NCBI RefSeq assembly: GCF_964194025.1
Contig: NC_134477.1
Coordinates: forward strand, 60,512,001-60,576,000
From: Convolutriloba macropyga
Lineage: Eukaryota
DNA: 64,000 nucleotides
Direction of reading: 5' to 3'
Below the pieces are notes generated by a model. That model had not been told where the DNA came from. It made no database searches and saw only the letters and a program-made list of their open reading frames with translations. Position numbers and translations under genes: made by a program. Positions 2 through 24,083 of this stretch are shown here, piece after piece. Each line of letters starts with the position of its first letter. The first letter of the stretch is position 1.

Positions 2-796
2 CTTAATACAACAAAATTAGGTTTAATTAGAATATCGGTTTATAATTCAGTGTTTAATGTGAATAGAAGAAATAATCAATTCTTAAATGCTAGTACTGTT
101 ATAGATGATGCAGCTTTACCCCAGGCTCTTAGTTCTGACCCCAGCTCTAACCCTAACCCTAACTCTACCTCAAGCCCAAAGATCACATCTGTTCTTAATT
201 ATAATTATAAAGGAATTCCATTGCTATACTCAACTATTACACCGGGGGCATATGAGTTAACTGACATAGCAGAATTAATAAAAGAAGAAACTAATGATAA
301 AGTTATAATAGAACCTGATAAGAATACGATGAAATGTTTAACTGAAATAAAACAGGGAGCAATTAGTTTTGATGTAGAAAACTCAATAGCCTTATTACTA
401 GGATTTAGAAAAATAGTTTATAAAAAAGTTAAATAAACATCTCAGAAAATTGTTGATATTATGGGTTTTAGTACTATTAACATTCATTGTAATGTGATAT
501 CTGGTGTTAAAGATAATGGGAATAACACAGACATACTCTTTACTTTTACTCTAACAGAACCACCAGGTTACTTGATAAATATTATACCAACTAATATCTT
601 GTATCAAAATGTAACTAAAGATAGAATAGAATATATAGAGTTTCATATTAAAGATGAGCATGGAAAACCTATAGACTTTAATGATGATGTATTAAGTTTT
701 ACTTTACATCTAGTGTGTTTAGCAGACCGAAGGTCTATTTGTTTTAGATATAAACTTAAACTTAAACTAAACTACAAAACTCTCCGATCCCAATAA
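2..796 (+). pseudogene. Minor capsid protein (penton), 5' end outside window, in-frame TAA at 434-436
   Basis: ORFs 50-436 and 461-796 are in one frame. Motifs YNSVFNVNRRNNQF, LLGF and INIHCNVISG..NG..DILFTF..PPGYLI..P..ILY..IEFHIKDEHGKPIDF..FTLHL are typical of Polinton/adintovirus pentons. Confidence 0.7.
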
Positions 797-2205: not shown

Positions 2206-2293
2206 AGCATTATTATCAAAATTAGATTTATTATTGAATTCCTCAAAAGTTAGGATGAGCGTTTTTTTATGATAAATTATTAAAGTTATTTAT

Positions 2294-2396
2294 CTAAGTC
2301 TAAGTCTAAATCAAGCCTAAGTCTAAGTCTAAGTCTAAGTCTAATTATAAGTCTAAGTCTAAGTCTAATTCTAAATCTAAATCTAAATCAAATCTA
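2294..2396 (+). repeat. (TCTAAG/TCTAAA)n hexamer tract in the divergent intergenic region
   Basis: Direct reading of the sequence. Confidence 0.85.
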
Positions 2397-2524
2397 TATT
2401 TTATATATGAAAATGGAGACAGGTAGCGTAGTTTTTTTTATTTTTAATATTTATAATTTGTTTTATAATATATAACTCAATACCAAGTAATTATACAAAA
2501 CTAGAGGAAGGCTTTGGTGGATTT

Positions 2525-4220
2525 ATGAATAGGAGTCTAGTTAGATTTGAATATGAAAAGTCACCATTACATACGATTGTTTATGGTGGAACTGGTACAG
2601 GCAAAACATATTTTTTTAGGCAATACTTAAAATTATACTCAGACCAAGACCAAGATCAAGTCAAGGACCAAGATCCGCGAAACGGTTACACCGATCAAAA
2701 CCAAGATGGCGAAGCATGGTCGGAGACCCATCGAGACCAAGATCGAGACCAAGATCAAAACCAAGATAAAGCCCAAAACCAATCTAAAAATATAGTTATA
2801 GTATGTGAAGATGATAGAGACTGGATAGATCCCGAGTCTAATAAGTTTTATACTGGGTTTAATAAATTTGATATAAATATGATCACAAAAAATAGTATGC
2901 ATAAATTTCAAAATTGTGTAATAGCACTTGATGATATGGGCGATAGGTTAAATAAAGATATAACTTATTATTTTAGTGAGGGTAGACATTATAATATTCA
3001 AATGATTGTAATGGGACATAAACCAGCTCAAATTGTTAATACAGCAAGAATGAGTTGTGATACTATTTAGTTAACCAATTATAATGGACCTGGTCTATTT
3101 AAAAATTTTAATGAGATATAAAAATGTGAACATGACTTTAGTAAAATAATCAGTGAATTAAATAGTAACTATTATAATCATACAGATGGAATGTCAGATG
3201 GGCTTCATTATGGTATAATTAAATATAATAGGAAGGAAAATACTTTTATTATTATTAATAGCATTAGAACAATGATATATGATTCAAGAGTTGGTTTCCT
3301 TGATTTAAATGCTCTTAGTTTAAAAGATAAGTTAGAAAGAGAAGATATAAATAAACTTATAGCATATATGAAACCACTCATGATAAATGCTACAGATAGA
3401 AATACTATTAATCATGATAATTATCAGTTTTATTTTGATAAAATTCTGACTTTAAATAATATTAAAATTCCGAATGATGTTTTAAGAGACGATTAAAGCA
3501 ATTGGTTTAAAGCAATTATCAAATATTGGTGGAATTATAAGTTCGATCTTAGTTATAACTAGTTATATTTATCCTAATGCAGTATTAAAAACTGTTGGAC
3601 ACGTGGCTATGGGTGCAAGCAATATGTTGAATAGAGTAAACACTTCGGTTAATGTTGGATATGGAGAAGATCTGGGAACCAGTTACACTGATATGCTAAG
3701 CAGTTGAGGAACCAAGACCGAAGGTCCTTCCACTGATCTGGGAATTGATCTACAAAATGATTACACTAATGGAGAAACACGGACAAAGTCCGATCTGGGA
3801 AATGATCTAAGAAGCGGTTACACCGATATAGGAACAGGCTCTGTCTATGACAAAACAAACGATTATTATATTTTAAAAAACATTTTAGTTAATAAGGCAC
3901 GCAAACTTATTGCACCCTTAGAAAAAATCTGCGAAGCAGTTTCACTGATAGAAGAAGAATATATATATGAAGAGATGGGAGTTTTCAATAGAAAGGTAGG
4001 AAGGTTTTTTAACAAACTATATATAAAAAATGAAGAATTTAGAGAAGAGATTATGAAATTGTTAGAGATAAAAAAGAATTAGACCTTCATTTGATTTTAG
4101 ATAAGAGATGTAAAACTAATACACTCAATACGTTAGGAAATGAATGTTTAGCAGAGTGTATCACATCTAAAGAGAATACTAAAGATTTAATTGAAATCAT
4201 GGCTAAGTATTTAACTGAGT
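2525..4220 (+). pseudogene. Second A32-like packaging ATPase with long C-terminal extension, several stops/frameshifts
   Basis: Walker A GGTGTGKT, DQ-repeat insert, Walker B VIALDD, EGRHYNI. ORF 3191-3496 is in the same frame after stops, and coding-like sequence continues to about 4220 (end approximate). Confidence 0.65.
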
Positions 4221-4269
4221 GAAAATGATTAGAAGTAGCTTAGCCAAATATTATAATTTTACCTATTAT

Positions 4270-5076
4270 AAATGCTTTTAACATGTTTAGAGTGTAACTA
4301 TAAATACGGAAACGTTGCTTGTTCAAACGATCATTATTAATCATGTCAAACAGATTAATCATGTCAAAAAGATAAAACAGATAAATGTATGTGTGGCAAT
4401 ATAATACTAAGTGCTATTTGTGCTAATAATTTTTTCCATGGGGTTGTTCATTAAAACATGAGGCTAGCTCCAGTTCTAATTCTAATTCTAGTTGTAATTC
4501 GAATTCTAATTCTAATTCTAGTTCTGGTTCTAATTCTAATTCTAATTCTGGTTCTAATTCTAGTTCTAATTATAATTCTGGTTCTGGTTCTAATTCCTAC
4601 CCTAAGATTGCCCCCAAGCACTAACCTTGCCCCTAGCACTAACCCTAGCCCCAACCCCAACTCAAACCCAAGCCCAAGCTCAGAAGTATTAACTAGATGT
4701 TGTAATATAATATTAACTAAAGTGTAATTATGTAAAACCACTAGTTGATTTTGATGAGAGTAAGTATACATGTAGAAGTTGTACTTCAGCTAAAGTTAGT
4801 TGTCCATATTGTGCTTCTGTTGTGAGATATGATGGAATAAGGGCTCATGTAAAGAAACAACATCCAGATGTAGATATACGTAAAGGATTTAGTAGAAGCA
4901 TATTAGATAAAAGACAAAGTCCTAGAGCTGTAAGTCCTTTAGTTATTGTCCAAACAGAGGAAAGTTGTTCGTGTAAATATTATAATATTGTATCATTTCT
5001 TATTAATAATGGGATAAATATAGAAAAAATAAAAGAAAATATATATTTATTGAAGAGTATAGATAATTTGAAATAA
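4270..5076 (+). pseudogene. Cys-rich / C2H2 zinc-finger protein remnant with S/N/P low-complexity insert
   Basis: YTCRSC..SCPYCASVVRYDGIRAHVKKQH (CxxC-x12-H-x4-H) reads into ORF 4822-5076. Upstream Cys clusters are interrupted by stops. Confidence 0.5.
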
Positions 5077-8000
5077 AAGTATAAAAAATTTTTAAAAAAA
5101 TCAAAAAAGAGTGATTCGCTCTTAAAGAGTGAAAAGGGCGATCTCCCTACTCAGGAATCACCCCGAAAAGAGTGAATCGCTCTTAAAGAGTGAAATTTAA
5201 AATATTAGCAAAATTTAAAAAACTTTTTACACGGCGGTCTCACTAGTTTTATACTAGTATCTGGGATACGTTCACCGGAGTCGGTGGGGATAGAACCCGA
5301 ACTATCCGTCTGATAACGGTTAATTACCAGCTTAACTCGACACTAGTGGTTTGCACTAAGTGAGACAAGAAATGATAGATTTAAAATATAAAAGAAGTGA
5401 ATATAGAGCTAATATATAGTAGTAGAAAATACAGGGAAATCAACAAACAGTAAAATTTGACCCAATTCGACATACGCGTTTAGCGTTTGCAGAACGGGTC
5501 AAATTTTTGCTGGTGGTTGATTTCCCTGTATTTTCTACTACTATTTTTGTCAATTGATGTTCGGATCATTAGGAGGAGATTAGTTTGAAAAAAGTCTATA
5601 TATGTTGTATTTACAAACGGATCATGCATTGGTTGGTTTTAACAGTTTAAACTGTAGCTCTTGATAGTAAAACTTTTCCAAAAGCAAATGAAGTGACTAA
5701 GGAAATTATTTAGCTCCTCTGAAAAATTTTATTTAGCTCCCTGCAATCAAATTTAATTCCAACGTTCGTTGAGGTAGCTCAGTGATATCCGTATTGAAGA
5801 TAAGACATAGTTTTCAAATTGTAACCAACCATTGGAATATGGACTTGCAAAAACACTAACAAACAAAACTTCTTGTAATCAAAATTTGTAAAAAAAAGTT
5901 TAAAACAGAGAATAGAAATAAATAATATGTCTTCCGTGTTTTTTACTGGTATTTACTGAATTGACTTTTGAATAGACTATCTCGCTAGCTTTCTGGCTTA
6001 TTCTGACTTTCAAAGAAGTCCAATTGGCTGACTAGAAACGAACTTAAACTATCTTTGTCGCTTTGATTGCCTAAAATGACATTGACTGTGGATCTTTGGA
6101 CAAAGTTTTCTTGCCATTGCGGAAGCGGAGGTTTTCTAGGAGAATTTACAATTTAATTGAGAGCCATTGTCTTTAAAAGAAAATTTAACAACCGGGAACA
6201 GCAAAGAATAAGGAAAAATTTCATTGTTAATACTGCTGGTATTATTTAGCTGTCTTACAAAAACACAAACATGAAACTACAGTGCAAGTTGAAGTATTGT
6301 TGTTTATGTTTTTCCAAGGTTTTTGTAACCAAATGCATTTCCATGTTATGTCGGCAATCATATTTCCCACGCGTAAAAAAGTGCAATCCTTTCGCTGGCG
6401 GTTCAAGCCTAGCAATAAAAGTGTTGGCCCCAAGCTAACAAATTCTGGTCTCAAGGAGACGGGTTGTAACGTGGCTCTTAAGGTAGTTAGTTTATTCTTG
6501 TAAAAGCATCATTTTTGCCCCAAAACTGGTGGATTTTCAAAGGAATTGACTTATTCTCCATTAATTGTCACAGATTTTCTGGAAAGATTCTGGAAAGAAA
6601 AAATCGACGAAAAACGTTTGTCTTTGTGATTAAATAATTTGTTTGTTACGATTTAACCAGAATTTTTCCAAATTTTTAGTCAATTTAAATTTAAACAATA
6701 TTAGCATTTTTTTAAAATTTCTAACGTGTTACTCGCAACTTTTTGTTCTGTTCGGAATTGCTGGTTAATGTGCTAATTTTCCTGAAATTTTTCCCCTGAA
6801 CTATTTGAAAAGATTCCTTCAAATATTGTGAGACAATTTTACTTTTAATTAGAGTTCGAAAATTCAGAAATGAGGCTAGCTCCAGTTCTAATTCTAATTC
6901 TAGTTGTAATTCGAATTCTAATTCTAATTCTAGTTCTGGTTCTAATTCTAATTCTAATTCTGGTTCTAATTCTAGTTCTAATTATAATTCTGGTTCTGGT
7001 TCTAATTCCTACCCTAAGATTGCCCCCAAGCACTAACCTTGCCCCTAGCACTAACCCTAGCCCCAACCCCAACTCAAACCCAAGCCCAAGCTCAGAAGTA
7101 TTAACTAGATGTTGTAATATAATATTAACTAAAGTGTAATTATGTAAAACCACTAGTTGATTTTGATGAGAGTAAGTATACATGTAGAAGTTGTACTTCA
7201 GCTAAAGTTAGTTGTCCATATTGTGCTTCTGTTGTGAGATATGATGGAATAAGGGCTCATGTAAAGAAACAACATCCAGATGTAGATATACGTAAAGGAT
7301 TTAGTAGAAGCATATTAGATAAAAGACAAAGTCCTAGAGCTGTAAGTCCTTTAGTTATTGTCCAAACAGAGGAAAGTTGTTCGTGTAAATATTATAATTT
7401 TGTATCATTTCTTATTAATAATGGGATAAATATAGAAAAAATAAAAGAAAATATATATTTATTGAAGAGTATAGATAATTTGAAATAAAAGTATAAAAAA
7501 ATTTTTAAAAAAATCAAAAAAGAGTGATTCGCTCTTAAAGAGTGAAAAGGGCGATCTCCCTACTCAGGAATCACCCCGAAAAGAGTGAATCGCTCTTAAA
7601 GAGTGAAATTTAAAATATTAGCAAAATTTAAAAAACTTTTTACACGGCGGTCTCACTAGTTTTATACTAGTATCTGGGATACGTTCACCGGAGTCGGTGG
7701 GGATAGAACCCGAACTATCCGTCTGATAACGGTTAATTACCAGCTTAACTCGACACTAGTGGTTTGCACTAAGTGAGACAAGAAATGATAGATTTAAAAT
7801 ATAAAAGAAGTGAATATAGAGCTAATATATAGTAGTAGAAAATACAGGGAAATCAACAAACAGTAAAATTTGACCCAATTCGACATACGCGTTTAGCGTT
7901 TGCAGAACGGGTCAAATTTTTGCTGGTGGTTGATTTCCCTGAATTTTCTACTACTATTTTTGTCAATTGATGTTCGGATCATTAGGAGGAGATTAGTTTG

Positions 8001-9283: not shown

Positions 9284-12200
9284 AGAAGCAAGCATGACCA
9301 GCAGCTAATGGTTTTTATACCAAAACTTTTACAGTAATTATATATTGAGAATCACAGCCAAAAATGTAGCTTTGAGGTTGGGAAAAACAGTCTGAAAATG
9401 TACCTAGTGAAAACGGTTGCATGATGCACCGATCTTTTTTCGTTTTACTCTGTTCTAGAAACTCAAACTTTTATTACAAATTATCAAAGTTATAGTGAAG
9501 ATAAAATCAGATTATAAAAACTTAAATTGTGAAAAATATCGATCACCTAATAATGAACCAAGTTAAACAGTGTGTATTTTCAAAAATAGAAAACTGTAAT
9601 TTTTTTTACCTTTTTGTTGAGGTAGCTATTTGATATCCGTTTTAAACATAAAACATTGCTTCCAAATTTTAACCAACAAATGGAAATGTAGACTTGCAAA
9701 AACACAAACAAACAAAACTTATTGAAATTAAAATTTGTCAAAAAAAATCAACATAGAGAACAGAAGTGATTAAAAAATCTTCCGTGATTTTCAATGCTTT
9801 CTGATAAGAATAAAAAATACAGTTGGTTAAGCTTGAAACGAAAACACTAATGTACTCAGTCTTCGGACACAAATTTCAATTCATTCCGGACGATTATATT
9901 GGTACAAAGGTACAACTCTAAAAACGCTTGAATGGATCTCTCAAAACTTTTCTGCAAAAACGAGAGCTTCAGTGAAAATCTTGTGGTACTGTTAAAAAGA
10001 CTGCTTTGCTAGATTTATGATTTATTCTCACTTTCAAAGAAGTCCAAATGGCTCGCTAGAAAACCTAAAAAAACCATCTTTGTCTTCTTGTTGTCTTATA
10101 ATCATTTCTTGGCAGTGAACCTTTGGACATAGTTTTTCTGCCGCTGCAGAAGCGGAGGTTTTCTAGGAGAATCTACAATTTGGTTGAGATCAATTGTTTT
10201 CAAATGAATCATAATATATAAAAAAACAAAGGTTGAAAAAATATTGATCGCCTCATATTGGAACAAACTAAGTAAACATATAAGAATGTCGGACGAATAT
10301 CTTTCAAGCAACCGGAGAAAAATTGGCTTGGGTAATACCCAGATGTCACTAAGAGGTGCTAGAGTTCGTGGTCATGGGTGACTGGAGCGGGGGTGGGGTC
10401 AAGCGATGATGAAGGTTGTTGAGTTGGGAGGTCTTAACGAGAGGGGAGTTCAAATTGGCAGGTCTAGGAGGTTGGACTTTGGATATTTTGGTATGTGTTG
10501 AAGTGGGGGTTGAGCTGAATGCGTTAGGGATGAGTGGAGATAGTGTTACTGAGGGGAGAAAAGGGGTGTTTAAAAAAAGATTAAGAACCGCCCTTCATAC
10601 CAAAAATTTGTCTACTCAAAATGATTTTGATGAATTTAACTCTTCAAGACAAGGCTAGGCTTAGGGCTCTCAGAGAATTCAATGCTATTTACAGAAGAAG
10701 GAGTCCTAATACTACAAAGAGTTAATGAAAAATGAAACAAAAACAGTTTCCGTGAAAAATTCAACTTCTCATGGTGTTTTTAAATCTGGAGTTTTAATAT
10801 TTAAAGCTAGCGTTTCAGTAGTTCTCTGTCTTTTTGAGACAATTGTGTCGAATTTTCGAATAATTGAGATAGATTTTCAGATAATTTTGCAATCGATGTT
10901 CAGAACGTTTGGGGGAAAACTTTTGAAAAAAAGCTGCCAGTGGATGAAGCATTGGTTGGTTTTAGCAGTTCTTAAAGTGACTTATATGCTTTTTGTTTAA
11001 AAAAAGTTTTACAATTAGTTCATCATACAAAAACACAAATAGAATTATTCTCCACAAACAAATGACAATTCATTCAAGAAAAATTTATCCCAATAAAGAT
11101 TTTAAAATGCGCCATGAAACTCTAAAAACATCTGACAATTTCTTTTTCCTTTCTGCAAACAAGAGAGCGGAAAAAATTTTGCAGTACTTTTGAATCGACT
11201 AGCTCGCTAGTTTTATGGCTTTTTCTGACTTTCAAAGAAGTCCAATTGGCCGGCTAGAAAAGACCTTTAACTTTCTTTGTCATTTTGTTTTCTCAAAATA
11301 ACTTTTTGACGGTGAATCTCCGGACGAAGTTTTCCTGCTGTTGCGGAAGTGGAAGTGTTCTTAGAGATTCTACAATTTTATTGATATCAATTGTTTTCAA
11401 TAGAATAGTTCACAATCAGGAAAAGCAGAAGAAAAGAAATAGATTGTTAGAACTGGGGCATTATTTAACTGTGTTAAAAGAATACAAACGTGCAATTTCA
11501 GTGCTAGTTGAAGTAGTATTGTTGTTGTGGTTTCACGGTTTGTAACAAATTGCCTTTCACTGGTATTTACGCAATCAGCTTTACGCAGGAAATTGACTTT
11601 TTCTCTTTCATTATATACTGTTTTTTTAAACCTTTTAAAAGAAAAAATCAAACAAAAACGCTTGTCTTCTACAACCCAACAGACAACTATAACAGACATC
11701 AGTGTTTCAGAGAAGCAAGACGAGAGAAGCACAAGTGGAGAAGTGACAGAGGAATTGAAGCTGGTGACAAGACGACCTGAGAAGTGGAGAGACAGGCAAC
11801 TGACGAAGGAACAAGACGAAGGAGTGAGACCAGAAGCAGTAGCCCTTGCTTAGGGAGTATGAGAGGTGCCTTGAAACCTTACCAGTAGCCTAGTAAATCA
11901 TCCGAAAAGTTGCTGGTGAGGTGAATTGGTGCCTTCTTTGCTTTTTTTCTTGGCGTAGGCTAACTTAGTGATCCCCTAGACCACACCGGATTAGCACCCC
12001 GAAGCTGGCACAGCTCCCCATAAGACTTTTTTCAAATATAGGATAAGTGTTTTTGCAACTTTCAACATAGAATAAAGGTTACTGCAACTTTTAAGTTTTA
12101 TAGAACAAGTGTTTTTGCAACTTTTTAACTTTTATAAAATAAACGTTGTTGCAACTTTTGACTTTGCCTTTTTCAGAGCAATAAAAACTAAATTGAATTG

Positions 12201-12293
12201 TTTAGATATATTCTGACTACCGGGACGCCGGTTAATACGAACAAAATATTAACCCTCCCTAAAACCTCCGAAAACTGCCCCCAGGCCCAAAAC

Positions 12294-13663
12294 ATGAAAA
12301 ATCATTTAGACCGCGACTGCGTGCAACCGCAAACAAGCACCCCCTTCCGTCCCCCCACAAACGACCCATATGAACCGACCCTATCTGACGAAAGCATAGA
12401 ATTGGGTCTAGAGATAGATATGGTCCCAAATCCACAAAATGAAAATGGTACCACTTTTTCTAACACCCGAAAACGGGCCCTTGACGCAGGTGAAACAACC
12501 GAAGCCGCTAGTAAACGCCCTAATGTAGAGCAGCAAAAAGTAAACACCGATAACCAACGAATTGTTTACATTAATTTTGAGGGAGAGAGACCTCGGCTAG
12601 CTACTTTTGCCAACACCATGAACAAACTTACTAAACAAAGAGAACCGGGCAGTGTAAGAGAAATGCCAATGAGAAATGGCGTCTCCATAAAACCTAAAAA
12701 TAAAGAAGCATCGAAATTGCTTACAACACAGAACATCATACAAGAGTTTCAAAAGAAAGAAGTAAAAATTAACTCTAACAGCAACAAAAGCCGAGAAAAA
12801 GTAACTCCGTGCTTTGTAGTCACAAAAGTTTCGCTAGATGTAAGCCTAAACACAATTAAAGAACAACAAGATGAACAAGGAATCAAATCGGAAAAAATAT
12901 TTAGGGTCAAAAGCAGCGTTACAAACCAGGAAACAAGACTAGTTACAGTCCTTACTAAAGAAGAAAACCAAGCAAAAAAAGCAATCACAAATGGGGTAGT
13001 ACTGTGCCTACAAAAATTCAAATGTGAACAATCAAAACAACAACGAAAAGTAGTGCAATGCTTCAAATGCCAAGCACATGGTCACATAGCAGCAAACTGC
13101 GATAACATGCAAAGATGCCCAATATGTGGTGGACACCACCACGTCAAAGATTGAAACCAAAATGAACTTTGCTGCGCAAATTGCATTGAAAAGCACAGCG
13201 CTGCCTATAAAGGTTGCCAAAAGTATAAAGAAGCAAAACCAAAAGCACGCGCTGCTTCATATGCAGAGGCCCTCAAAAATAAACCAGAGAACAAGGACAA
13301 AGAAAGAGCGCAAAAAATAGCAAGTGATGCTCAAACACAAATCAAAAACAATCTCCAGAGCATGCTATAGAGTCACTTTACCAAACTAGAAAACAAAATT
13401 GAACAAACAACAAAGATTGCAAATGAACAACTTAGAATCGACCTCCAGAGTCAAATCGATCAATTAAATATAAACCTGCAAAATACAATAAAAATAAATA
13501 AAAAACGAGAGAAAATATTAGGAAAACAGTCATGGAGGACGTCACAAGAGTGCGATGTGAATTTTTAAAAGACAACAAAATAACAGTAGATGAGGTGAAA
13601 ATGAGACACAAACTAAATAAACTCAGTGAGAACAGAACTAAAAACCAGAACACCCACCACTAA
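12294..13663 (+). pseudogene. LINE ORF1 (Gag-like nucleic-acid-binding protein)
   Basis: Three knuckles CFKCQAHGHIAANC, CPICGGHHHVKD[TGA] and CANCIEKHSAAYKGC are in frame across the TGA at 13152-13154. Further stops downstream; end approximate. Confidence 0.85.
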
Positions 13664-13723
13664 GAGAAACAACAATTTGAAACAACTTCAAAATCAAAAC
13701 GGTATAAAACAAAAAAAAGCAAA

Positions 13724-16405
13724 ATGATTGAAAAACAAAAATCACAAAAAAACACTTATATTCACGCAGCTAAACTGTCGCGGACTAAATAAAAACAAAA
13801 TAGAAATATGAAATATATTGGAAAAAACCCAAGCTGACTTAGCCTGCCTGAACAAAACTCACTTAGGTAGGAAAGAACAACCAAAACTAGAAGGATATAA
13901 CCTAGCAGGAAACACTAAAGACAGCCGCTTAGGATCTGCAATCTACATCAAACACCGATTAAATTACGAACTTATAGAAACAAAAACAGATAAATCAGAG
14001 AGCAAACTAACACAAGAATGTATTACAAAAAAAGTACTTGGATTCTACGTAACAAACATCTAGGTATCACCACATTTAGAAAAAAGAACGGACCTAATCA
14101 CAAAAATAGCAAACAACGAAGCCCACTTAATCACTGGTGATAATAATGTAAAACATCCAATGTTTGGAGCCAATGATCTAACCACTAACAGATTGGGAAA
14201 ATTAATTGAACAATGGCTTGGTGAGGAAAACTATATAATACTAAATATTTATGATTGCACACACAAAGATGGTGGAACACTAGATGTACACCTAGCCAAC
14301 CCTAAACTCACAAGCTTATTCGATAATTTTTATGTCTTCAACGAAAGTCCTAGTGATCACTACCCAAATGTTAGCACCTATAACATAGACAAACCAATCG
14401 AGTCACACAAAAAAGTTAACTGGCAAAAGTACAAAAATCACATCTTGCATAATTCAGATGACCTAGATAGAAACATAACAAACAAAATGAACTTAGAAGA
14501 AATCATAGACAAAATTACACAAAAAATTCAAGCTGCATACAAATAGAGCATATATGTTAACGAACACATAGCCACAAACCATCAAATCAATAAACTGACA
14601 AGAGAAAAGCATAAGTTAGAAAGAAATAGGAACAAACTGAGAAGAAACGACGAAAGAAATACAACCCAACACCAAACAATATGCAATAAGATTAATATAC
14701 TGACAAAAGAAATAAAAAGAATAAGTAAAGAAAACACAACAAGACAACAAATGAAACTAATTGACAAACTAAACCAAGCAAAGAAAGGCAGTTACTTCTG
14801 GAAAGCTGCAAAAATTTTACTCAACCAAAATCAGAAAAACAACGAACAATTACCATTGAATAATCAGGAAGCTGCAGATGCATTCGCTGAAAAACTAAAA
14901 ACAACAATGAAAACAAACGAATCAAAACACATAAGGGAAAAGATCACGAGAAAAATATTTCACTGAAAATAAGAGAAACAAACTTTAAGGCAATCAAACT
15001 AAGTGAAGATGAATGGAAACACACAGAAGTAAAACCTTCAACTCTCAAAAATATATTAGGAAATCGTAAAAATACTGCACCAGGACATGACGGAATAAGC
15101 TATCAAATGATAAAACATTTACCATTAAAAACCTTAGAAAACATAGCACAAACAATTCAAACATCATTACAATTAGGACATGTACCAGCCCAATGGAAAA
15201 TTTCAACCATAACCATGATACCAAAAGTAGGAAAAGATCACAAAACTTTAAAAGGATACAGACTATTATCATTAATATTTTGCCTTGGAAAACTGTGCGA
15301 GAGCATTGTAAACAAACACCTGGTAAACCACTGTGAAAAATTAAACCTGTTCGGTGATCAACAAAGTGCCTTCAGATCTGGCAGATGCACAACAGATAAT
15401 CTTCTAACGCTAACAGGAAAAGCAACAACAAGCTTTAAATGGAAAGGTGCCACAGCTGCTGCATTTTTCGATGTAGAACAAGCTTTTGACTCAGTATGGC
15501 ACGAAGGTATCTTATATAAGCAAATTGAGATTAAAATACCATGGCTGATCACAAAATGGACTAGCAGCTTCCTAAGTAACAGAAAAATTAAAGTAAAATA
15601 CAACCAAGCACTTTCCAAAAGTTTCACAACCGAAGCAGGGGTCCCCCAAGGAAGCATTATAAGCCCAATCTCGTTCAATGTGTATGTAAGCAAACCAAAA
15701 TGTAAAGATACGTCAATTTCACAATATGCAGATAACATCGCAATATACTACACACATGAAAAACAAGAAATAGCTACTAAACACTTACAAATCGCAATTA
15801 AACACTTAGAAAAATGGTGCGAAAAATGGAAAATAGTCCTCAACGCGGGAAAAACAATATATACCATCTTCACTAGACAAATACTGAACACAAATCTAAG
15901 ACTAAGTTTAGGGTCAGAAGACATCAACGTCAGCAAAGAAGTAAAATTTCTTGGACATGATCTCAATTATAAATTGACTCGGACAAAACATGTAAACAAA
16001 ATAGTCGCAAAAATGCAACAAAGAATGAACATGCTAGGACACCTAAAATCAAAAAACATAACACCTAATTTTATCATGTACCTTTATAAAACAATGGTAA
16101 GACCACTATACATGTATGCAAATGCAGCCTGGGCAAATGTAACAAAAAGTGATCTCAACAAGATACAAAGAGAACAAAATAAAGCCATAAGACTTGCATA
16201 TAACCTACCAATGTGGACAAATTTAGATGAACTACATCAAATAGGAAATTTAGAAATAGTGAGCAGAACAATCCAAAAATTAAGCTCGGAATACCTTGCA
16301 AGGACCATAAAACGAAATAAAAACAGTAAAAACATAACAGAAAAACATTTAATAACTTGGAGCCAGGTCAAAATGTTTCAAACTCATTTGCAAAACATTC
16401 TATAG
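13724..16405 (+). pseudogene. LINE ORF2: APE endonuclease plus reverse transcriptase, disrupted
   Basis: QLNCRGL, TGDNN, GTLDV and SDHYP (APE); WK..IPKVGK, Q.AFR, FFDVEQAFDSVWH, GVPQGS and YADN (mutated YADD) (RT). Confidence 0.92.
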
Positions 16406-18550
16406 GTGGATGCGGATGTCTTGGTGTATGACTCGAGGCAGGCGTTAGCTGAAGCCACTAAAAGGGAAAAAGAATAAAAACCTACAAAATTAGGGAAAAA
16501 TTCAAAACAAAGCTGGATGCGGATGTCTTGGGGTATGACTCGAGGCGTTAGCTGAAGCCATTCAAAGTGATAAAGAATAAAAACAAACAAAATTTGGACA
16601 AAATTCAACTCAAAGGTGGATGCGGATGTCTTGGGATATGACTCGAGGCGTTAGCTGAAGCCACTAAAAATGAAAAAGAATAAAAACAAATAAAACGAAA
16701 AAGAATAAAAACAAACAAAATCTGGACAAAATTCAAAACAAAGGTGGATGCGGATGTCTTGGGGTATGACTCGAGGCATTAGCTGAAGCCACTAAAAGCG
16801 AAAAAGAATAAAAACAGAGGAAAAAAATCTGAACAAAATTCAAAACAAACGTGGATGCGGATGTCTTGAGGTATGACTCGAGGCGTTAGCTGAAGCCACT
16901 AAAAGTGAAAAAGAATAAAAACAAACAAAATTAGGGCATAATTCAAAACAAAGATGGATGCGGATGTCTTGGGGTATGACTTGAGGCGTTAGCTGAAGCC
17001 ATTCAAAATGAAAAAGAATAAAAACAAACAAAATTAGGGCATAATTCAAAACAAAGGTGGATGCGGATGTCTTGGGGTATGACTCGAGGCGTTAGCTGAA
17101 GCCATTCAAAGTGATAAAGAATAAAAACAAACAAAATTTGGACAAAATTCAACTCAAAGGTGGATGCGGATGTCTTGGGATATGACTCGAGGCGTTAGCT
17201 GAAGCCACTAAAAATGAAAAAGAATAAAAACAAATAAAACGAAAAAGAATAAAAACAAACAAAATCTGGACAAAATTCAAAACAAAGGTGGATGCGGATG
17301 TCTTGGGGTATGACTCGAGGCATTAGCTGAAGCCACTAAAAGCGAAAAAGAATAAAAACAGAGGAAAAAAAATCTGAACAAAATTCAAAACAAACGTGGA
17401 TGCGGGTGTCTTGAGGTATGACTCGAGGCGTTAGCTGAAGCCACTAAAAGTGATAAAGAATAAAAACAAACAAAATTTGGACAAAATTCAACTCAAAGGT
17501 GGATGCGGATGTCTTGGGATATGACTCGAGGCGTTAGCTGAAGCCACTAAAAATGAAAAAGAATAAAAACAAATAAAACGAAAAAGAATAAAAACAAACA
17601 AAATCTGGACAAAATTCAAAACAAAGGTGGATGCGGATGTCTTGGGGTATGACTCGAGGCGTTAGCTGAAGCCACTAAAAGCGAAAAGGAATAAAAACAG
17701 AGGAAAAAAATCTGAACAAAATTCAAAACAAATGTGGATGCGGATGTCTTGGGGTATGACTCGAGGCGTTAGCTGAAGCCACTAAAAGTGAAAGAGAATA
17801 AAAACAAACAAAATTAGGGCATAATTCAAAACAAAGGTCGATGCGGATGTCTTGGGGTATGACTCGAGGCGTTTGCTGAAGCCAATCAAAATTAAAAGGA
17901 ATAAAAACAATTAAAATTTAGACAAAATTCAAAACAAAGGTAGATGCGGATGTCTTGGGGTATGACTCGAGGCGTTAGCTGAAGCCATTCAAAGTGAAAA
18001 AGAAAAAAAAAAACAAAATTTAGGACAAAATTCAAATCAAAGTTGGATGTGGATGTCTTGGGGTATGACTCGAGGCGTTAGCTGAAGCCATTCAAAATGA
18101 AAAAGAATAAAAACAAACAAAATTAGGACAAAATTCAAAACAAAAGTGGATGCGGATGTCTTGGGGTATGACTCGAGGCGTTAGCTGAAGCCATTCAAAA
18201 TGAAAAAGAATAAAAACAAACAAAATTAGAACAAAATTCAAAACAAAGGTGGATGCGGATGTCTTGGGGTATGACTCGAGGCGTTAGCTGAAGCCTTCCA
18301 AAATTAAAAAGAAAAGAAACAAACAAAATTTGTACAAAATTCAAAACAAAGGTGGATGCGGATGTCTTAGGGTATGACTCGAGGCGTTAGCTGAAGCCAT
18401 TCAATATGAAAAAGAATACAAAACAAACAAAAATAGGACAAAATTCAAAACAAAGGTGAATGCGGATGTCTTGGGGTATGACTCGAGGCGTTAGCTGAAG
18501 CCATTCAAAATGAAAAAGAATAAAAACAAAGTTAGGGTAAAATTCAAAAA
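16405..18550 (+). repeat. Tandem array of 20 conserved ~52-nt hairpin units separated by A-rich linkers (LINE 3' UTR)
   Basis: Unit GGTGGATGCGGATGTCTTGGGGTATGACTCGAGGCGTTAGCTGAAGCCAYT; periods about 103, 108 and 127 bp. Confidence 0.92.
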
Positions 18551-18668
18551 ACACACTGCCCGGGCTAATCTCTGGTTAGAATTTTTTTTGATTTTTTTTG
18601 CGCTAACATATATGTATGTGTGCCTGGATGCCTAATATGTAAAGAACTGATGGACCTCGCATCAAGAA

Positions 18669-19345
18669 TGATCAGTGTGGGAGACTAGACTGATCATGGG
18701 AATCAGTGTAGGTCTTGAAGCTGATCTAACCCCAGGGTACCAGTAAGGGAGGGCAGCATGATCACGGTAACCATGCTGTGGCCTCGATACAGACCCACAC
18801 TCTAACAACACATTGTATTTTTTTATAATAATAAAGGACACTACAACTCAAAATATAGAATAAATGACACTATAATAAAAAATAGAATAAACTAAAATAC
18901 AGCTAGCTTTCAACTTAGAATAGAAAACGATGCAATATCTATATAGAATAAACGACACTGAAACTTTGGACTTTGAACATTCAATAAGGCAACCAAACAG
19001 GCTACCACGGAATTACTAAACTTGTTCTAACCACACCATCCAAGAGGGGAAAATTGAATTCTAACTTAATTTTTTTTGTTTTATTTTAGCGCGCCTCTAC
19101 AGACCGCAGAAAGAAAGGACCGAAACTGCTGATGACTGATCAGTGTGGGAGACTAGACTGATCACAGGAATCAGTCTAGGTCTTGAAGCTGATCTAACTC
19201 CAGGGTACCAGTAAGGGAGGGCAGCATGATCGTGGGAATCATGCTGAGGCCTTGATACTGGCCCCATACTCTAACTCCAGGGCACCAGTAAGGGAGGGCA
19301 GCATGATCACGGGAACCACGCTGAGGCCTTGATACTGGTCCCACA
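18669..19345 (+). ncRNA. Five related ~60-65 nt hairpins (family B) in LINE 3' UTR, putative structured RNA
   Basis: Upper stems CTAGACTGAT/ATCAGTCTAG and CAGCATGAT/ATCATGCTG; loops CATGGGA, CACGGTA, CACAGGA, CGTGGGA, CACGGGA. Confidence 0.6.
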
Positions 19346-19429
19346 CTCTGTTCTCGCTTGGGAACAACCACTCACCCCCGCAAGGGCGAAAATAACCGCC
19401 TCAATAAGAGGTAAAAACTACAAGCCTTT

Positions 19430-19626
19430 GTACTCTCAGTGCACGGGCCGGCTGCTCGTCCTCTGAAACGGAGGGCTTGCTGTCGGTGGTGCACTGGGAG
19501 TGCATCTCTTTCTCTTTCTCACTATAAACATCAAAACCAACAACAAGTCACCGTACTCTGAGTGCACAAGCCGGTTGCTGGTTCTCTGAAAGGGGGGGCT
19601 GGCTGCCGGAGGTGCACTGGGGGCGC
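19430..19626 (+). ncRNA. Two ~74-nt hairpins (family C) in LINE 3' UTR
   Basis: GTACTCTCAGTGCAC...GTGCACTGGGAGTGC basal stem with (G)AAA apical loop, at 19430-19503 and 19553-19626. Confidence 0.55.
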
Positions 19627-22600
19627 CTCTCTTTTTTCCTTCTTCTTTTTGTTTTCTCTTTGTCTCTTCCCTCGTTATTCTTCCCCACTCCTCCACTCCT
19701 CCACTCTCTCCCTACTCCTCCACTCTACTCCTCCACTCCTCCACTCTCTCCTCCACTCTCTCCCACTCTCTCCCCCCACACCCTCTCTCCTAAACTCCCT
19801 CTAAAACCACCTTCCTGAAACCCCACGCCCCCTCCGTTCTTCCCCAAAACTCCATAACCAAATTTTCCATCCAAACCAACCTCCCTGCCTCCTTTCCTCC
19901 AGACATGTACCCAATATAACCACAAAAAACCAACGAAAATACCAAAACCAAATGCAAACCAAAGTGAAAGCGCGGTTTAAAAGGTGGTGTAAACTAACAA
20001 CTAAGAAATCGCAACTACCAGTTCACTGCTAATTGAACACATTAATAATAATAATTATAATCAAACAAAAACGCTTGTCTTCGTGGTTAAATATTTTGTT
20101 TGATATTTTTAGCAGACTTTTTTCAAACTTTTAAAACTGTCAATTTAAACTTAAACTATGTAAAAAGCTAGTTTTACGGATTTTTCTGACTTTCAAAGAC
20201 GTTCAATTGGCTGGCTAGAAAAGACCCTCAACTATCTTTGTCCTTTTTTTTGCTGAAAGTGAATTTTTTTACGGTGAATCTGCGGATGAGTTTTATGTTG
20301 CTGTTGGTGAAGCGCATTTTTTCTAGGAGAATCTGCAATTTGATTGACATCAATTGTTTTTTAAACAATATTTCAGATTCAACAACAGCAAAGAGATAGA
20401 AAATGAACACTTTTGAAACTGTCTTATATTTATCTAAGTTACGTAGACACAAACAGCCAAAAATATTTTTTGTCCTTTGTTTGCTTAAAATGACTTTTTG
20501 ACGGGTGGACCTCTGGACGAAAATTTCCTGCAGTGGCTGAAGCAGAGGTTTTCTAGGAGAATGTACAATTTGATTGAAATCAGTTGTCGTCAGAAAAGTT
20601 TTCATAATCAGGATCAGCAAAAAAACTAAAATTGGAGAAATTGGTGCTGATATGATTCTTTTTAACATAAGCACACTCATTCAATCTATTTGCTAGTTCA
20701 TGCAGTATTGTTGTTGTACTTCCTCAGTTTGTAACCAACTGCGTTTCCCCGTATGTAAGCAGACACATTGACCACGCATAAATCAAGTGCAATCCGTTCA
20801 ATGACAATAGGAGCCCAGCAAGAAGGGTATAGCCCATAGCTAACATATATTGCACTCAAGGTGGTGGGATTTAACTTAGCTCTTGAAGGTTTTAGTTCAA
20901 CCTAAAATCAACATGATTTTTTGCCCCAAACTTGGTGGATTTTAATAGGAATTGACTCATTCTCGTTTAGTTATCAATGATTTTCTCGAAACTTTTTAAA
21001 GAAAAAATCGAGGAAAAACGTTTGTCTTGATGGTTAAACTTTTTCTTGATACATTTTTAGCAGATATTTTTCGAAATTTTAGTAAAATTAAATTGAAACA
21101 ATGTAAAAATTGATAACAATTTTTAAGATTCTTTAAGAGATAAAACAACATTTTTTGGAAGTGCTAAATTTCCTCTACATTTTTTCATTTTTCCCAAGCC
21201 TTCCAAAGAATTCATTCAGAAATCGTGAAGACAATTTTACTTTTAGTTAGGGTTCGAAAATCCAGAAATAAGCTAGCATTAACAGCAGTCAACGGTTACT
21301 ATACCAATAATTTTACAGACAGAGCAACTAATTGTTATCCTATCAAACCGTTAAAGTATATAAACATTGAACACCCCAGTCAAAACTGTTTGCAGACATT
21401 TTTGCTTTGAGGTTGGAAAAATAGTGTAAAAATTGTACCTAATGAAAACGGTTGAATGCCAAAACGGTCTTTTTTCATTTTTTTTCTGTTCTGGAAACTC
21501 AACTTTCCATTACAATTTATCAGAAGTTTAAATTGAAGATAAACTCAGGCTGCATAAAAAATTAATGGTTGAAAAAATATCGATTGCCTAATATTGATAC
21601 AAGTTAAATAAACATAATCGAATAATGTGGGGCGAATATCTTTAAGCAAACCGCAAAATGTTGGCTTTGCTGCTAAGTGGCTGTCACTTAGTGATGATAG
21701 AATTTGAGGTCGGGGCTGAGTGGAGCGGTGTTGGTAAGAATCGATGATAGCTGGGACTTTAGTTGGTATGCCTGAATGAGAGGGTGTCAAAATTGACAGG
21801 TCCAGGAGCTTGTACTTAGGACATTTTGGTGTGTGCCGAGGTGGTGGTTGAGTTGAATGTGTTAGGGATAAGTGGAAATAGGGTTACTGAGGGGAGAAAA
21901 GGGGTGTTTAAAATTAAAATTTATGAACCGCCCTTCATATCATAAATTTGTCTCCTCAAAACGATTTTGATGAATTTAACTCTTCAAGACTGGCAAGGCT
22001 TAGGGCTCTCAGAGAGTTCAATGCAATTTACGGAAGAAGGAGTCCTAATACTACAAAGAGTGCAATGAAAAATGAAATAAATTCAATTTCCTTGAAAAAT
22101 CCCATTGTGTTATCATGGTGTTTTAAAATCTGGAGTTATAATATTTAAAGCTAGGATTTCAGTAGTCTTCTGTCTTTTTGAGAGAAAATTGTCAAGTTTT
22201 CAAAGAATCAAGTCAAGTTTATCGATTTTTTGTCAATCGATGTTCAGAACGTTAAGAGGAAAACTGTTGAAAAAAATCTAAATCTGTTATAACTGCCAAC
22301 AGATGATGCGTTGGTTGGTTTTAGCAGTTCAAACTTAAATTCTTGTTATGTAATTTTTCTTCAAAGGACACTTAATTGGATCTAGATTATTTTTAACGTT
22401 CTGAAAAATTAGCAAATTTCTACAATTTCAACAGTTTTATAAAATTTTCTGATTTTTTAATGTAGACCAGTGATATCTGTAATGAAGATGCAAAATAGCT
22501 TCCAAATTGTATCCAACAGTTGAAATTTGGACTGGCAAATACACCTACAAACAAAAGCAGTTTCAAAGTTGGTTCATATTGAAACAGAAACACATATAGA

Positions 22601-24083
22601 ATCAGTCTCTGCAAAAAATGACAATTCATTCCGCAATATTTTATCGGAAGAGATGTTTTGAAAAGCACAAGGAAAATCTAAACACATCTGATTTTAACTC
22701 TTTTTTCCTTTCTGCAAAAATGAGAGCGTAAAAAGTCTTGTAGCTCTTTTAAACAGACTAAGTCGCTAGTCTTAGGACAAATCTTGACCTTCAAACACGT
22801 CCAATTGGCTGACTAGAAAACACCCGGAACTATCGTTGCCTTTTTGTTTGCTTAAAATGACTTTTTGACGGTGGATCTGCTGAAGCGGAGGTAATGTACG
22901 AGAATCCAAAGTTTAGTGGATAGCATTTGTCCTCAAACGAATAGATTGCCGGAAAATAGCTGCCGTTGGTTCCAATAAGCATGCTTGGGATTGAAAGATT
23001 AAAAGATATTAAAAAATAATTTTGTACTAAAACTTTTTAAGTCCGATTTATTTTGATGGCATTTCGTAGTTGAACATACTTTTGTTTCTTAGAGAGAGAC
23101 TACAAGGCTACTGTAAATACCAATAAGCATTAGGTATGGTAACTAAGACTTATATGAACGACGTTCAAATAGCGGACATCTAAAATTGGGCTTTATGGGT
23201 TTATCCCGTTTCTAAATCTGACTTCAATTTTTTATACTGACTCTGTTCATTTTGAATTGCTTTGCTGAGCAACTGATGTTCGAAATCACTTTTGGCAGAA
23301 TGAGAGAAGAGAGAAACTAGCCTAGAGAAGTCAAAAAGATTTCACGCAAAATGTTGAAAAAGCGGCAAAATGAGGAAAAGCAAAACATTTTTTTTTGTTC
23401 GACGAAGTAAAAAACATAGCAGGACAAGTCCTGAAATATAATTTGAAGAATTGAATAAAAAACTCAGACGTACTCCACGTGACCAGCAGATTAATTGAAA
23501 AATGCCAGCGAGAACGCAAAAATCATCTCAAGAAATTGAGAAACTAAAAGATTCAAAACTAAACAAAAACATACTCATTGCTAAAACTTTTGAAGCTTAT
23601 AAAACTAAGGTAAATTTTTTCCCTATATAAATACCTATTTGAAAATTATGTTCAAACCAGTTTTTGTATCTGAAATCGTTCCAGTATTTTATCTGCAAGA
23701 CCTGAAAAATATTCATTGGCCTTTAACTCAAAAATGAACAAAAATTTTAAGATATAAAGGAATCAATTGCAAATTATAAAGAAATGTTGCTGAAAATCGT
23801 GATATAAATACCTTCAGAATCATTTCTGTGTCTCTAGGGGCTATCCAGTAACCCAATTCCAAGCTGTAAAACTCATTGGCTCATAGATCGATAGGCATTA
23901 ATTTTTAGAAAAATTTTCAATCTTCAAAAATAGAAATTCGTTCTATTAAATGTTGAAAGCCATTCATTTGCCCCCTAGCAACTATTTAATAAAATACTGT
24001 AAAACCCTAGATGAGGTTACCTGGCTACTGAGGCAAGAGAAAATAAATAAAATACAAATGTTTTCAAAAAATTGAAAAAAAAA

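What the first reader, a model, noticed from the sequence alone, without database searches (positions are those of the whole stretch)
16405..20058. A LINE carrying a 3.65-kb 3' UTR cassette of at least 27 structured RNA hairpins in three families
The 24-bp TSD and tail show that the whole region was inserted with the element. More than 40% of the element is non-coding 3' UTR, organised as hairpin family A (x20), B (x5), C (x2) and then a pyrimidine-rich tract. LINE 3' UTRs usually carry at most a single recognition stem-loop. Hypotheses (inference): a retrotransposon-borne pre-miRNA/siRNA cluster; multimerised RNA localisation signals analogous to the Drosophila I-factor/Jockey stem-loops used for oocyte transport; or a decoy array titrating host RNA-binding or silencing proteins.
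Basis: partly seen in the sequence, partly recalled or inferred. Interest (0 to 1): 0.8.

Follow-up and report, generated by a model that had tools for sequence, protein, structure and literature searches.

The report
LINE with long hairpin-repeat 3' UTR
This is a dead, full-length copy of a jumping gene (LINE) whose whole family carries an unusually long tail region built of repeated RNA-hairpin modules, one of which behaves like an unstable minisatellite; it is real and uncommon, but what it does remains unproven.

Summary
A full-length, degenerate APE/RT LINE lies at 11670-20058, between an exact 24-bp target-site duplication. Its 3' UTR is 3.65 kb, 44% of the element. It holds 20 units of about 103 bp (A), five B hairpins of two types, two roughly 31-bp C hairpins, a CT-rich tract and a short repeat tail.

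The cassette is not a one-off. About 35 other copies in this 1.18-Gb genome, down to 81% RT identity, show the same module order, with 2-22 A units.

Fixed wobble pairs on the sense strand outnumber A.C mismatches 15:1, against 97:74 among rare variants. The A core folds far better in sense than in antisense (-22 versus -5.5 kcal/mol). Both points suggest sense-RNA hairpins kept by selection. There is no two-sided covariation and no Rfam match, and no RNA run was found.

The A array is also an unstable DNA minisatellite:
- At least 8 of this copy's 20 units come from block duplications (96-100% identical) that postdate insertion.
- One locus holds core matches across 12.6 kb.
- The start of the array at the stop codon is specific to this copy.

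The family's likely RT-recognition signal is a separate 10-bp terminal stem-loop next to a variable microsatellite tail. The A hairpins are too short to be pre-miRNAs.

My verdict is a new variant of a known kind, of moderate interest.

The parts
11646..11669 (+). 5' copy of the 24-bp target-site duplication
   Evidence: An exact 24/24 match to 20059-20082. These are the only two matches in the window at up to 3 mismatches, and shuffles gave 0.
11670..12191 (+). 5' UTR, full length, with 29-34-bp tandem repeats at 12030-12159
   Evidence: Other copies match from query base 2-3 onward. TRF finds the repeats. The first 31 nt occur once in the genome, so they are not the host spliced leader.
12192..13154 (+). 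ORF1 (320 codons, one CCHC zinc knuckle), ending in TGA in frame with ORF2
   Evidence: Pfam zf-CCHC, E = 3e-4.
13155..16405 (+). ORF2 remnant with APE endonuclease and reverse transcriptase, broken by at least 5 stops and one frameshift near 14891-14963
   Evidence: Exo_endo_phos_2 at 1.7e-9 in 14064-14543, and RVT_1 at 5.9e-35 in 15107-16405. No RNase H match was found.
16405..18530 (+). A array: 20 units of 103 nt (variants of 107/108 and 128 nt). Each unit has a 49-nt conserved core and an A-rich linker (63% A). The core is an 11-bp hairpin with 5 G.U pairs and a 6-nt loop, enclosed by short outer helices.
   Evidence: TRF, the repeat finder D2 and folds. A 35-nt part of the core has 550 genome matches, and the reversed control has 0.
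16486..17668 (+). Zone of block duplications inside the A array (16486-16785, 17030-17329, 17369-17668)
   Evidence: The blocks are 99% and 96% identical (D1). Units 1, 6 and 9 are 100% identical and units 2, 7 and 10 are 97-99% identical. The copy's terminal RT branch is 0.056.
18531..18639 (+). Junction after the array, poorly conserved
   Evidence: 70-86% identity to young copies and not detectable in old ones.
18640..18800 (+). B module 1: Ba hairpin at 18683-18716 and Bb unit at 18723-18800 (inner hairpin 18754-18778)
   Evidence: Folds. Direct repeat D4 is 90% identical to 19134-19264.
18801..19099 (+). AT-rich spacer with 29-bp repeats, present in only a few copies
   Evidence: Found only in the window copy, C1:83.9M (69%) and C8:1.85M (79%). 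TRF finds repeats at 18830-18891.
19100..19350 (+). B module 2: Ba hairpin at 19150-19183 and two 77-nt Bb units at 19193-19269 and 19270-19346
   Evidence: TRF gives period 77 x 2.0. Ba and Bb are 87-95% identical across subfamilies.
19351..19425 (+). Conserved linker (iC) with three small hairpins
   Evidence: Fold z = -2.05. 83-94% identity across copies.
19426..19506 (+). C1 hairpin: 31 pairs, a 5-nt loop and 7 G.U pairs
   Evidence: dG -55.1, z -7.9, against -31.3 for the antisense strand. 92.5% of cells are paired across 47 sequences.
19549..19630 (+). C2 hairpin, a paralogue of C1
   Evidence: dG -44.1, z -3.4. D8 shows 80% identity to C1.
19631..19900 (+). CT-rich tract, the least conserved module
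   Evidence: GC skew -0.54. 59-68% identity to other copies. It carries a (CT)n microsatellite in one old copy.
19901..20044 (+). Conserved 3' end. Positions 20012-20035 are a mutated copy of the family's 10-bp terminal stem-loop.
   Evidence: The majority sequence of 16 copies (the window's own included) folds as a 10-bp stem with a UUCA loop, -12.8 kcal/mol. The window copy carries 2 substitutions that break it.
20045..20058 (+). Short tail, ATAATAATAATTAT
   Evidence: Other copies carry different short tandem repeats at this same position.
20059..20082 (+). 3' copy of the target-site duplication

Best explanation
The window holds an old, dead, full-length copy of a lineage-specific APE/RT LINE family. 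In this family the multi-kb modular 3' UTR is part of the element itself. The order is: A units, Ba/Bb hairpins, two long C hairpins, a CT tract, a conserved end with a terminal stem-loop, then a variable microsatellite tail.

Shown:
- The architecture is shared by all mapped subfamilies.
- The hairpins are sense-strand-specific.
- In the lineage that was copying itself, wobble pairs were tolerated but A.C mismatches were not.

Inferred: the hairpins act in cis on the element's own RNA. The terminal stem-loop is most likely the RT-recognition signal. The A, B and C hairpins are most likely extra protein-binding sites for RNP assembly, stability or transport, for example for the CCHC ORF1 protein. 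The A array would then be a multimer of one such site, spaced by A-rich linkers.

Shown: the A copy number is not fixed. It ranges from 2-4 units in old subfamilies to 4-22 in young ones. It also changes at the DNA level after insertion, as in a minisatellite. At least 8 of this copy's 20 units were added in place, and one locus has grown to about 12.6 kb.
For: Family-wide cassette:
- RT, A, B and C/end matches are collinear at many loci.
- About 35 loci map as RT, A x n, B, iC, C x 2, CT, end, with n = 2-22.
- Old subfamilies keep 2-4 A cores and both C hairpins.

Sense-RNA signal:
- The A unit folds with z = -2.4 to -3.7 in sense and +1.2 in antisense. The A core alone gives -21.9 or -24.3 in sense against -5.5 or -8.7 in antisense.
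- C1 gives -55 in sense against -31 in antisense.
- Fixed stem states are 15 G.U to 1 A.C (binomial p = 5e-4). Rare variants, mostly post-insertion, are 97 to 74 (Fisher p = 0.003).
- The only two fixed changes in the 49-nt A core between subfamilies both turn a Watson-Crick pair into G.U.
- Core divergence between subfamilies is 2 of 49, while the RT nodes differ by about 0.08.

Terminal signal: a 10-bp stem-loop lies 9 nt before copy-specific microsatellite tails.

Minisatellite behaviour: near-identical blocks in this copy and core hits over 12.6 kb, mostly at multiples of about 103 bp, at C8:1849781-1862396.

Lineage-specific: one distant relative (42% RT identity) has no array after ORF2.
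Against: - There is no two-sided compensatory change. For the C hairpins, every measure equals the shuffled controls.
- In A, pair-preserving transitions are not clearly more frequent than disruptive ones once the two subfamily-level changes are set aside.
- The Ba and Bb hairpins are strand-symmetric palindromes, so they could equally act as DNA.
- The youngest copies carry anything from 4 to 14 A units. A large copy number is therefore not needed for transposition.
- The G.U excess could partly reflect a strand-biased mutation process, such as A-to-I editing of double-stranded RNA or CpG decay, rather than selection.
- No RNA or small-RNA data, no protein-binding data and no Rfam family are available.
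- All sampled copies are at least 2.7% diverged.
Confidence: 0.5

Rival explanations
1. The A array is a neutral minisatellite (VNTR) that hitch-hikes in a tolerant 3' UTR. It arose by slippage or unequal exchange, its hairpin is incidental, and only the terminal stem-loop matters to the element.
For: - Copy number runs from 2 to 22 with no threshold among the youngest copies.
- Block duplications occurred in place.
- One locus has a 12.6-kb expansion.
- There is no covariation.
- Linker length and sequence drift freely.
Against: - Every copy down to 81% RT identity keeps at least 2 cores.
- The 49-nt core changed at only 2 positions between subfamilies, both to G.U, while the linkers diverged.
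- Folding is strongly asymmetric between strands.
- Fixed G.U to A.C is 15:1, against 97:74 among rare variants.
Confidence: 0.27
2. The hairpins are precursors of small RNAs. The C1 and C2 hairpins would be Dicer or Drosha substrates giving miRNA-like or siRNAs, either for the element or for the host defence against it.
For: C1 and C2 have 31-pair imperfect stems about 80 nt long, the size of animal pre-miRNAs. They are kept as a pair in all subfamilies.
Against: - The A stem is 11 bp and the B stems are 9-14 bp, which is too short.
- The C terminal loop is only 5 nt.
- No Rfam miRNA match was found at E up to 1.
- No RNA run exists to check.
Confidence: 0.08
3. The array works as DNA. It would be a row of binding sites for a host DNA-binding protein, giving insulator, enhancer or chromatin effects, like the Su(Hw) site array of gypsy.
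For: A conserved 49-nt core alternates with variable AT-rich spacers, and the loop and unpaired core positions are as conserved as the stem. The Ba and Bb hairpins are strand-symmetric palindromes.
Against: The wobble asymmetry and the sense-only folding of A and C have no meaning for duplex DNA.
Confidence: 0.07
4. Each A unit is a cryptic poly(A) site: AAUAAA in the linker, followed about 33 nt later by the GU-rich core. The array would then end most transcripts early and separate translated mRNA from the full-length template.
For: The array holds 23 AATAAA hexamers, and the core that follows each is G/U-rich.
Against: AATAAA turns up in 48% of shuffled linkers and is absent from the linkers read in two of three old-subfamily copies. 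Full-length and 5'-truncated insertions all carry the complete downstream cassette, so read-through is the rule.
Confidence: 0.04
5. The repeated hairpins are RNA transport or localisation signals, as reported for the I factor and gurken, multiplied to give stronger germline targeting.
For: The only support is the presence of several sense-strand stem-loops in a LINE RNA.
Against: No match was found to any curated RNA family. From my own knowledge, the I-factor signal is a single stem-loop inside ORF2, not a 3' UTR array. This could not be tested here.
Confidence: 0.04

Closest known systems
Stringent-type LINE 3' ends (eel UnaL2, zebrafish ZfL2; L2/CR1-like elements). This comparison rests on my own knowledge.
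   Same: A conserved short stem-loop lies a few bases before a short tandem-repeat tail. The element has APE, RT and an ORF1, and makes TSDs.
   Different: Those elements have short 3' UTRs with that single signal. Here about 3.5 kb of extra hairpin modules lie upstream of it. The tail repeat differs between copies and subfamilies.
Tandem repeats in retrotransposon non-coding regions that vary in number and seed satellites: plant Ogre/Tat 3' regions (PMC7004042, title and abstract) and the SVA/LAVA VNTR domain (PMC4432496, title and abstract)
   Same: The array sits inside the non-coding part of the element. Copy number differs between insertions. Arrays expand in place to much larger sizes.
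   Different: This host element is a LINE in an animal. Each unit carries a conserved, sense-specific G.U-rich hairpin, and the array is followed by three further hairpin modules.
Drosophila telomeric LINEs HeT-A and TART (PMC10088271 lists them; their multi-kb A-rich 3' UTRs are from my own knowledge)
   Same: A non-coding 3' region of several kb makes up a large share of the element and shows A-rich periodicity.
   Different: Those elements form head-to-tail telomeric arrays without TSDs. This family is dispersed, with a 24-bp TSD and 5'-truncated copies.
Retroviral packaging stem-loops bound by CCHC nucleocapsid (a works-like comparison only, from my own knowledge)
   Same: Several short sense-RNA stem-loops with G-rich apical parts occur in an element whose ORF1 has a CCHC knuckle.
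   Different: No homology exists and no binding has been shown. Here the stem-loops sit in the 3' UTR and are multiplied up to about 20 times.
Another LINE of the same genome with four same-fold hairpins between ORF0 and ORF1
   Same: Repeated hairpins lie in a non-coding part of a LINE in the same animal.
   Different: That is a different family, the hairpins lie in a different position (5' side), and there are far fewer of them.

Membership tests
APE-type non-LTR retrotransposon (LINE) | Reverse transcriptase domain | tested here: met
   Pfam RVT_1 at 5.9e-35 in 15107-16405.
APE-type non-LTR retrotransposon (LINE) | Apurinic-type endonuclease upstream of RT | tested here: met
   Exo_endo_phos_2 at 1.7e-9 in 14064-14543.
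APE-type non-LTR retrotransposon (LINE) | Target-site duplication, with dispersed and often 5'-truncated copies | tested here: met
   An exact 24-bp TSD. At least 42 RT matches and many tail-only matches lie on many contigs.
Stringent-type LINE 3' recognition signal | Conserved stem-loop directly upstream of a short tandem-repeat tail | tested here: met
   A 10-bp stem with a UUCA loop lies 9 nt before copy-specific repeats. It is intact or nearly so (at most 1-2 substitutions) in most of the 16 sequences compared and is mutated in the window copy.
Stringent-type LINE 3' recognition signal | The stem-loop is required for reverse transcription by the element's own RT | not testable with these tools
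   This needs a retrotransposition or RT-binding assay.
Animal pre-miRNA cluster | Hairpin stem of roughly 30-35 bp with arms of about 22 nt | tested here: not met
   The A stem is 11 bp and the B stems are 9-14 bp. Only C1 and C2, with 31 pairs, reach this size.
Animal pre-miRNA cluster | Discrete small-RNA duplexes from the arms | not testable with these tools
   No RNA run holds the sequence, and the runs found are DNA contigs.
Curated RNA families (Rfam 15) | Match to a covariance model | tested here: not met
   0 matches at E up to 1 over 11000-21000 on both strands.
Conserved RNA structure by covariation | Compensatory changes on both sides above control levels | tested here: inconclusive
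   For the C hairpins, 92.5% of cells are paired, but 4 pairs with double changes compare with 4.7 in shuffles. The A core is almost invariant. Power is low because all sequences come from one family.
TE-borne VNTR / minisatellite | Copy number varies among insertions and arrays expand in place | tested here: met
   2-22 units among loci. Blocks inside this copy are 96-100% identical. Core hits span 12.6 kb at C8:1.85 Mb.
HeT-A/TART-type telomeric LINE | Head-to-tail terminal arrays without TSD | tested here: not met
   The copies are dispersed and internal, and this one has a TSD.

The most novel reading that the evidence does not exclude
The A array is a selected, multivalent RNA scaffold. 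Each unit offers a G.U-rich hairpin for an element protein such as the CCHC ORF1p, plus an A-rich linker that could hold poly(A)-binding protein. A LINE that ends in a microsatellite instead of poly(A) would then carry its own internal substitute for a poly(A) tail and a packaging platform. Growth from 2-4 to 10-20 units would have helped the young subfamily spread.
Probability: 0.15. Interest if true: 0.65.

Novelty: new variant of a known kind. Interest (0 to 1): 0.4.

Why it matters
If the modules are real cis-acting RNA elements, this family would show that a LINE can stack many structured signals upstream of its usual terminal stem-loop. It would also show that one of those signals can be multiplied like a minisatellite. 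That would give a natural dosage series, from 2 to 22 units, for asking how LINE RNAs recruit proteins.

Independently of function, the family is a clear animal example of a retrotransposon-borne repeat that keeps expanding in the genome after insertion. One locus already spans about 12.6 kb, which is one route by which satellites are born. The finding also warns annotators that part of such a 'UTR' may postdate the insertion.

Tried and rejected
- **Rfam scan.** Scan at E up to 1 over 11000-21000: no match.
- **RNA evidence.** Two run searches found only DNA-like contig sets. Read laying confirmed DNA: contigs run across the 3' junction into unique flank, at a depth of about 65 in run X1 against thousands inside the repeats. 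It says nothing about expression.
- **Covariation.** The count of structure pairs on 47 C hairpins gave values equal to the shuffled controls. My own tallies for 284 A units gave only a weak, non-significant excess of pair-preserving transitions.
- **Core conservation test.** Testing whether the A core is more conserved than RT by identity to the window copy is confounded, because the core used as query equals the family majority. An earlier version with loose gap costs gave meaningless values near 100% and was discarded.
- **Spliced leader.** The element's first 31 nt occur once in the genome, so this idea is rejected.
- **TSD as an artefact.** The flanks do hold a dispersed 75-80% repeat, but the 24-mer is unique to the two junctions, so this idea is rejected.
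- **Clade assignment.** Homology search, Pfam and the Atlas gave only generic RT names.
- **Literature.** Five literature searches ran and one paper was opened. I found no description of this family or of a comparable LINE 3' UTR.


Full report
**1. What is there**

The 24-mer AATCAAACAAAAACGCTTGTCTTC occurs exactly twice in the window, at 11646-11669 and 20059-20082. It occurs in no shuffle. It brackets an 8389-bp element at 11670-20058.

The flanks contain an unrelated dispersed repeat at 75-80% identity. The 24-mer is unique to the two junctions, so it is a true target-site duplication.

The element has these coding parts:
- A 5' UTR that other copies share from base 2-3, so this copy is full length.
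- An ORF1 with one CCHC knuckle.
- An ORF2 with an Exo_endo_phos_2 endonuclease and an RVT_1 reverse transcriptase.

ORF2 is broken by at least five in-frame stops and one frameshift. In an RT tree of 28 copies, the window copy sits on a terminal branch of 0.056, and the shortest terminal branch is 0.027. The sampled family therefore looks old and inactive.

**2. The 3' UTR**

From the ORF2 stop at 16405 to the tail there are 3654 nt, 43.6% of the element.
- TRF finds a period-103 array at 16404-18530 with 19.7 copies and score 1883. The repeat finder finds 20 copies.
- Each unit has a 49-nt core and an A-rich linker that is 63% A.
- The core folds as an 11-bp hairpin with five G.U pairs and a 6-nt loop, inside short outer helices. 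dG is -21.9 kcal/mol in sense and -5.5 in antisense.
- Downstream lie two B modules. Each has a Ba hairpin (13-14 bp) and one or two 77-nt Bb units with a 9-bp inner stem. These are two structural types that share a GAUC-RYGGGA-AUC top, and they fold equally well on both strands.
- Next come a conserved linker and two paralogous C hairpins of 31 pairs. C1 gives -55.1 kcal/mol with z -7.9, and C2 gives -44.1 with z -3.4. C1 antisense gives only -31.3.
- Last come a CT-rich tract (GC skew -0.54), a conserved end and the tail.

**3. Is it family-wide?**

Yes.
- The genome (1.18 Gb) holds at least 42 RT matches at 79-93% identity.
- A, B and C/end matches lie collinear behind them.
- I merged the fetched loci into 35 segments. 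Mapping the window's modules on them gives the same order, RT, A x n, B, iC, C x 2, CT, end, in every copy that reaches that far. This includes subfamilies at 81-84% RT identity.
- The A count is 2-4 (once 7) in the old subfamilies and 4-22 in the young one.
- A 35-nt piece of the core has 550 matches in the genome at up to 2 mismatches. Read backwards as a control, it has none.
- The one more distant relative examined, from another assembly at 42% RT identity, has no tandem array after ORF2.

The cassette is therefore specific to this lineage.

**4. Part of the array postdates insertion**

- Inside the window array, block 16486-16785 is 99% identical to 17030-17329 and 96% identical to 17369-17668.
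- Three 128-bp units are 100% identical to each other, and their neighbours are 97-99% identical.
- If the 0.056 branch is mostly post-insertion decay, two blocks both present at insertion should now differ by roughly 11%.

The blocks, at least 8 units in all, were therefore added or homogenised in the genome afterwards.

At C8:1849781-1862396, exact core matches are spread over 12.6 kb, mostly at multiples of about 103 bp. That is a satellite-like expansion of one insertion's array. I could not fetch that DNA.

The array's start at the stop codon is also specific to this copy. In 21 of 25 other copies read at this junction, ORF2 ends in TAA; nearly all copies of the young subfamily then carry a ~70-nt A-rich leader before the first core. 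Here a deletion joins them and creates a TAG stop.

**5. Evidence for and against RNA structure**

There is no two-sided covariation.
- On 47 C hairpins, 92.5% of cells pair, but every measure equals the shuffled control.
- The A core is almost invariant.
- Pair-preserving transitions in A are only weakly more frequent than disruptive ones.

There is, however, a strand-specific signal.
- Counting each position once, the family majority has 15 G.U pairs and one A.C mismatch in the A, C1 and C2 stems (binomial p = 5e-4).
- Rare variants at Watson-Crick pairs, which are mostly decay after insertion, give 97 G.U to 74 A.C (Fisher p = 0.003).
- The only two fixed changes in the core between old and young subfamilies both turn a Watson-Crick pair into G.U.
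- The core differs at 2 of 49 positions, where the RT nodes differ by about 0.08. Linker length and sequence changed freely.

This pattern is what selection on a sense-strand RNA fold would give. A strand-biased mutation process acting on double-stranded RNA could mimic it.

No Rfam family matches. No RNA run was found, and the runs that hold the sequence are DNA.

**6. The terminal signal**

Across 16 copies, the last conserved bases form a perfect 10-bp stem with a UUCA loop (-12.8 kcal/mol). This lies 9 nt before a short tandem repeat that differs between copies: units such as GATTTGC, ATTTC, ATTTG, AATC or, here, TAA-like. This is the layout of stringent-type LINE 3' ends (from my own knowledge) and is the likeliest RT-recognition element. 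In the window copy two substitutions destroy it. The A, B and C modules are therefore additional to the usual signal, not a replacement for it.

**7. Reading**

The best-supported account is a family-wide modular 3' UTR of sense-RNA hairpins kept by selection. I infer that it acts in cis on the element's RNA, in protein loading, stability or transport. One module, A, is a copy-number-unstable multimer.

The size of the array is not critical, because the youngest copies carry 4-14 units.

The rivals, in order of weight, are a purely neutral minisatellite, small-RNA precursors (only C fits by size), a DNA-level protein-binding array, tandem cryptic poly(A) sites, and localisation signals. On the poly(A) rival, AATAAA is frequent in the linkers but is expected in 48% of shuffled linkers.

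**8. Novelty**

Tandem repeats in non-coding parts of retrotransposons that vary in number and seed satellites are known (PMC7004042 and PMC4432496, titles and abstracts). So are LINEs with multi-kb 3' UTRs, namely HeT-A and TART (from my own knowledge; PMC10088271). I found no description of a LINE with this stack of four hairpin types, or of this family.

Earlier notes of this scan call the genome an acoel worm and report a smaller hairpin array in another of its LINEs. I did not check either of those.

My verdict is a new variant of a known kind. It is real, family-wide and moderately interesting, and its function remains open.

Noticed in passing
window 13152-13154: ORF1 ends in a single TGA and ORF2 continues in the same frame (frame map; sequence, D12).
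   Followed up: no
window 12030-12159 and 18830-18960: The 5' UTR's 29-34-bp tandem repeats and the 3' UTR spacer's 29-bp repeats both contain an ATATAGAATAAA-like motif. The spacer is present in only a few copies. It may have been copied from the 5' UTR.
   Followed up: partly
G000:C8:45226580-45235430 (L071, L072): A 2086-bp unit, 97% identical between copies, holds a 5'-truncated tail of this LINE (B to end) plus about 1.2 kb of flank. It is repeated at least 3-4 times in tandem, which is a segmental tandem duplication.
   Followed up: partly
G000:C8:1849781-1862396: A-core matches extend over 12.6 kb behind one insertion, a satellite-like expansion. The sequence could not be fetched.
   Followed up: partly
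window 9975-10209, 11173-11406, 20151-20357, 20451-20587, 22749-22930: A dispersed repeat at 63-81% identity flanks the LINE on both sides. It is an unidentified short repeat family into or near which the LINE inserted.
   Followed up: no
G000:C9:7200892-7208399 (L021, L025): Two old-subfamily copies (87% and 83% RT identity to the window) lie head to tail about 3.3 kb apart, each with its own short A array and tail.
   Followed up: no
window 772-5542: Earlier first-reader notes place a Polinton here, with a protease-ATPase fusion and a terminal foldback. I did not examine it.
   Followed up: no
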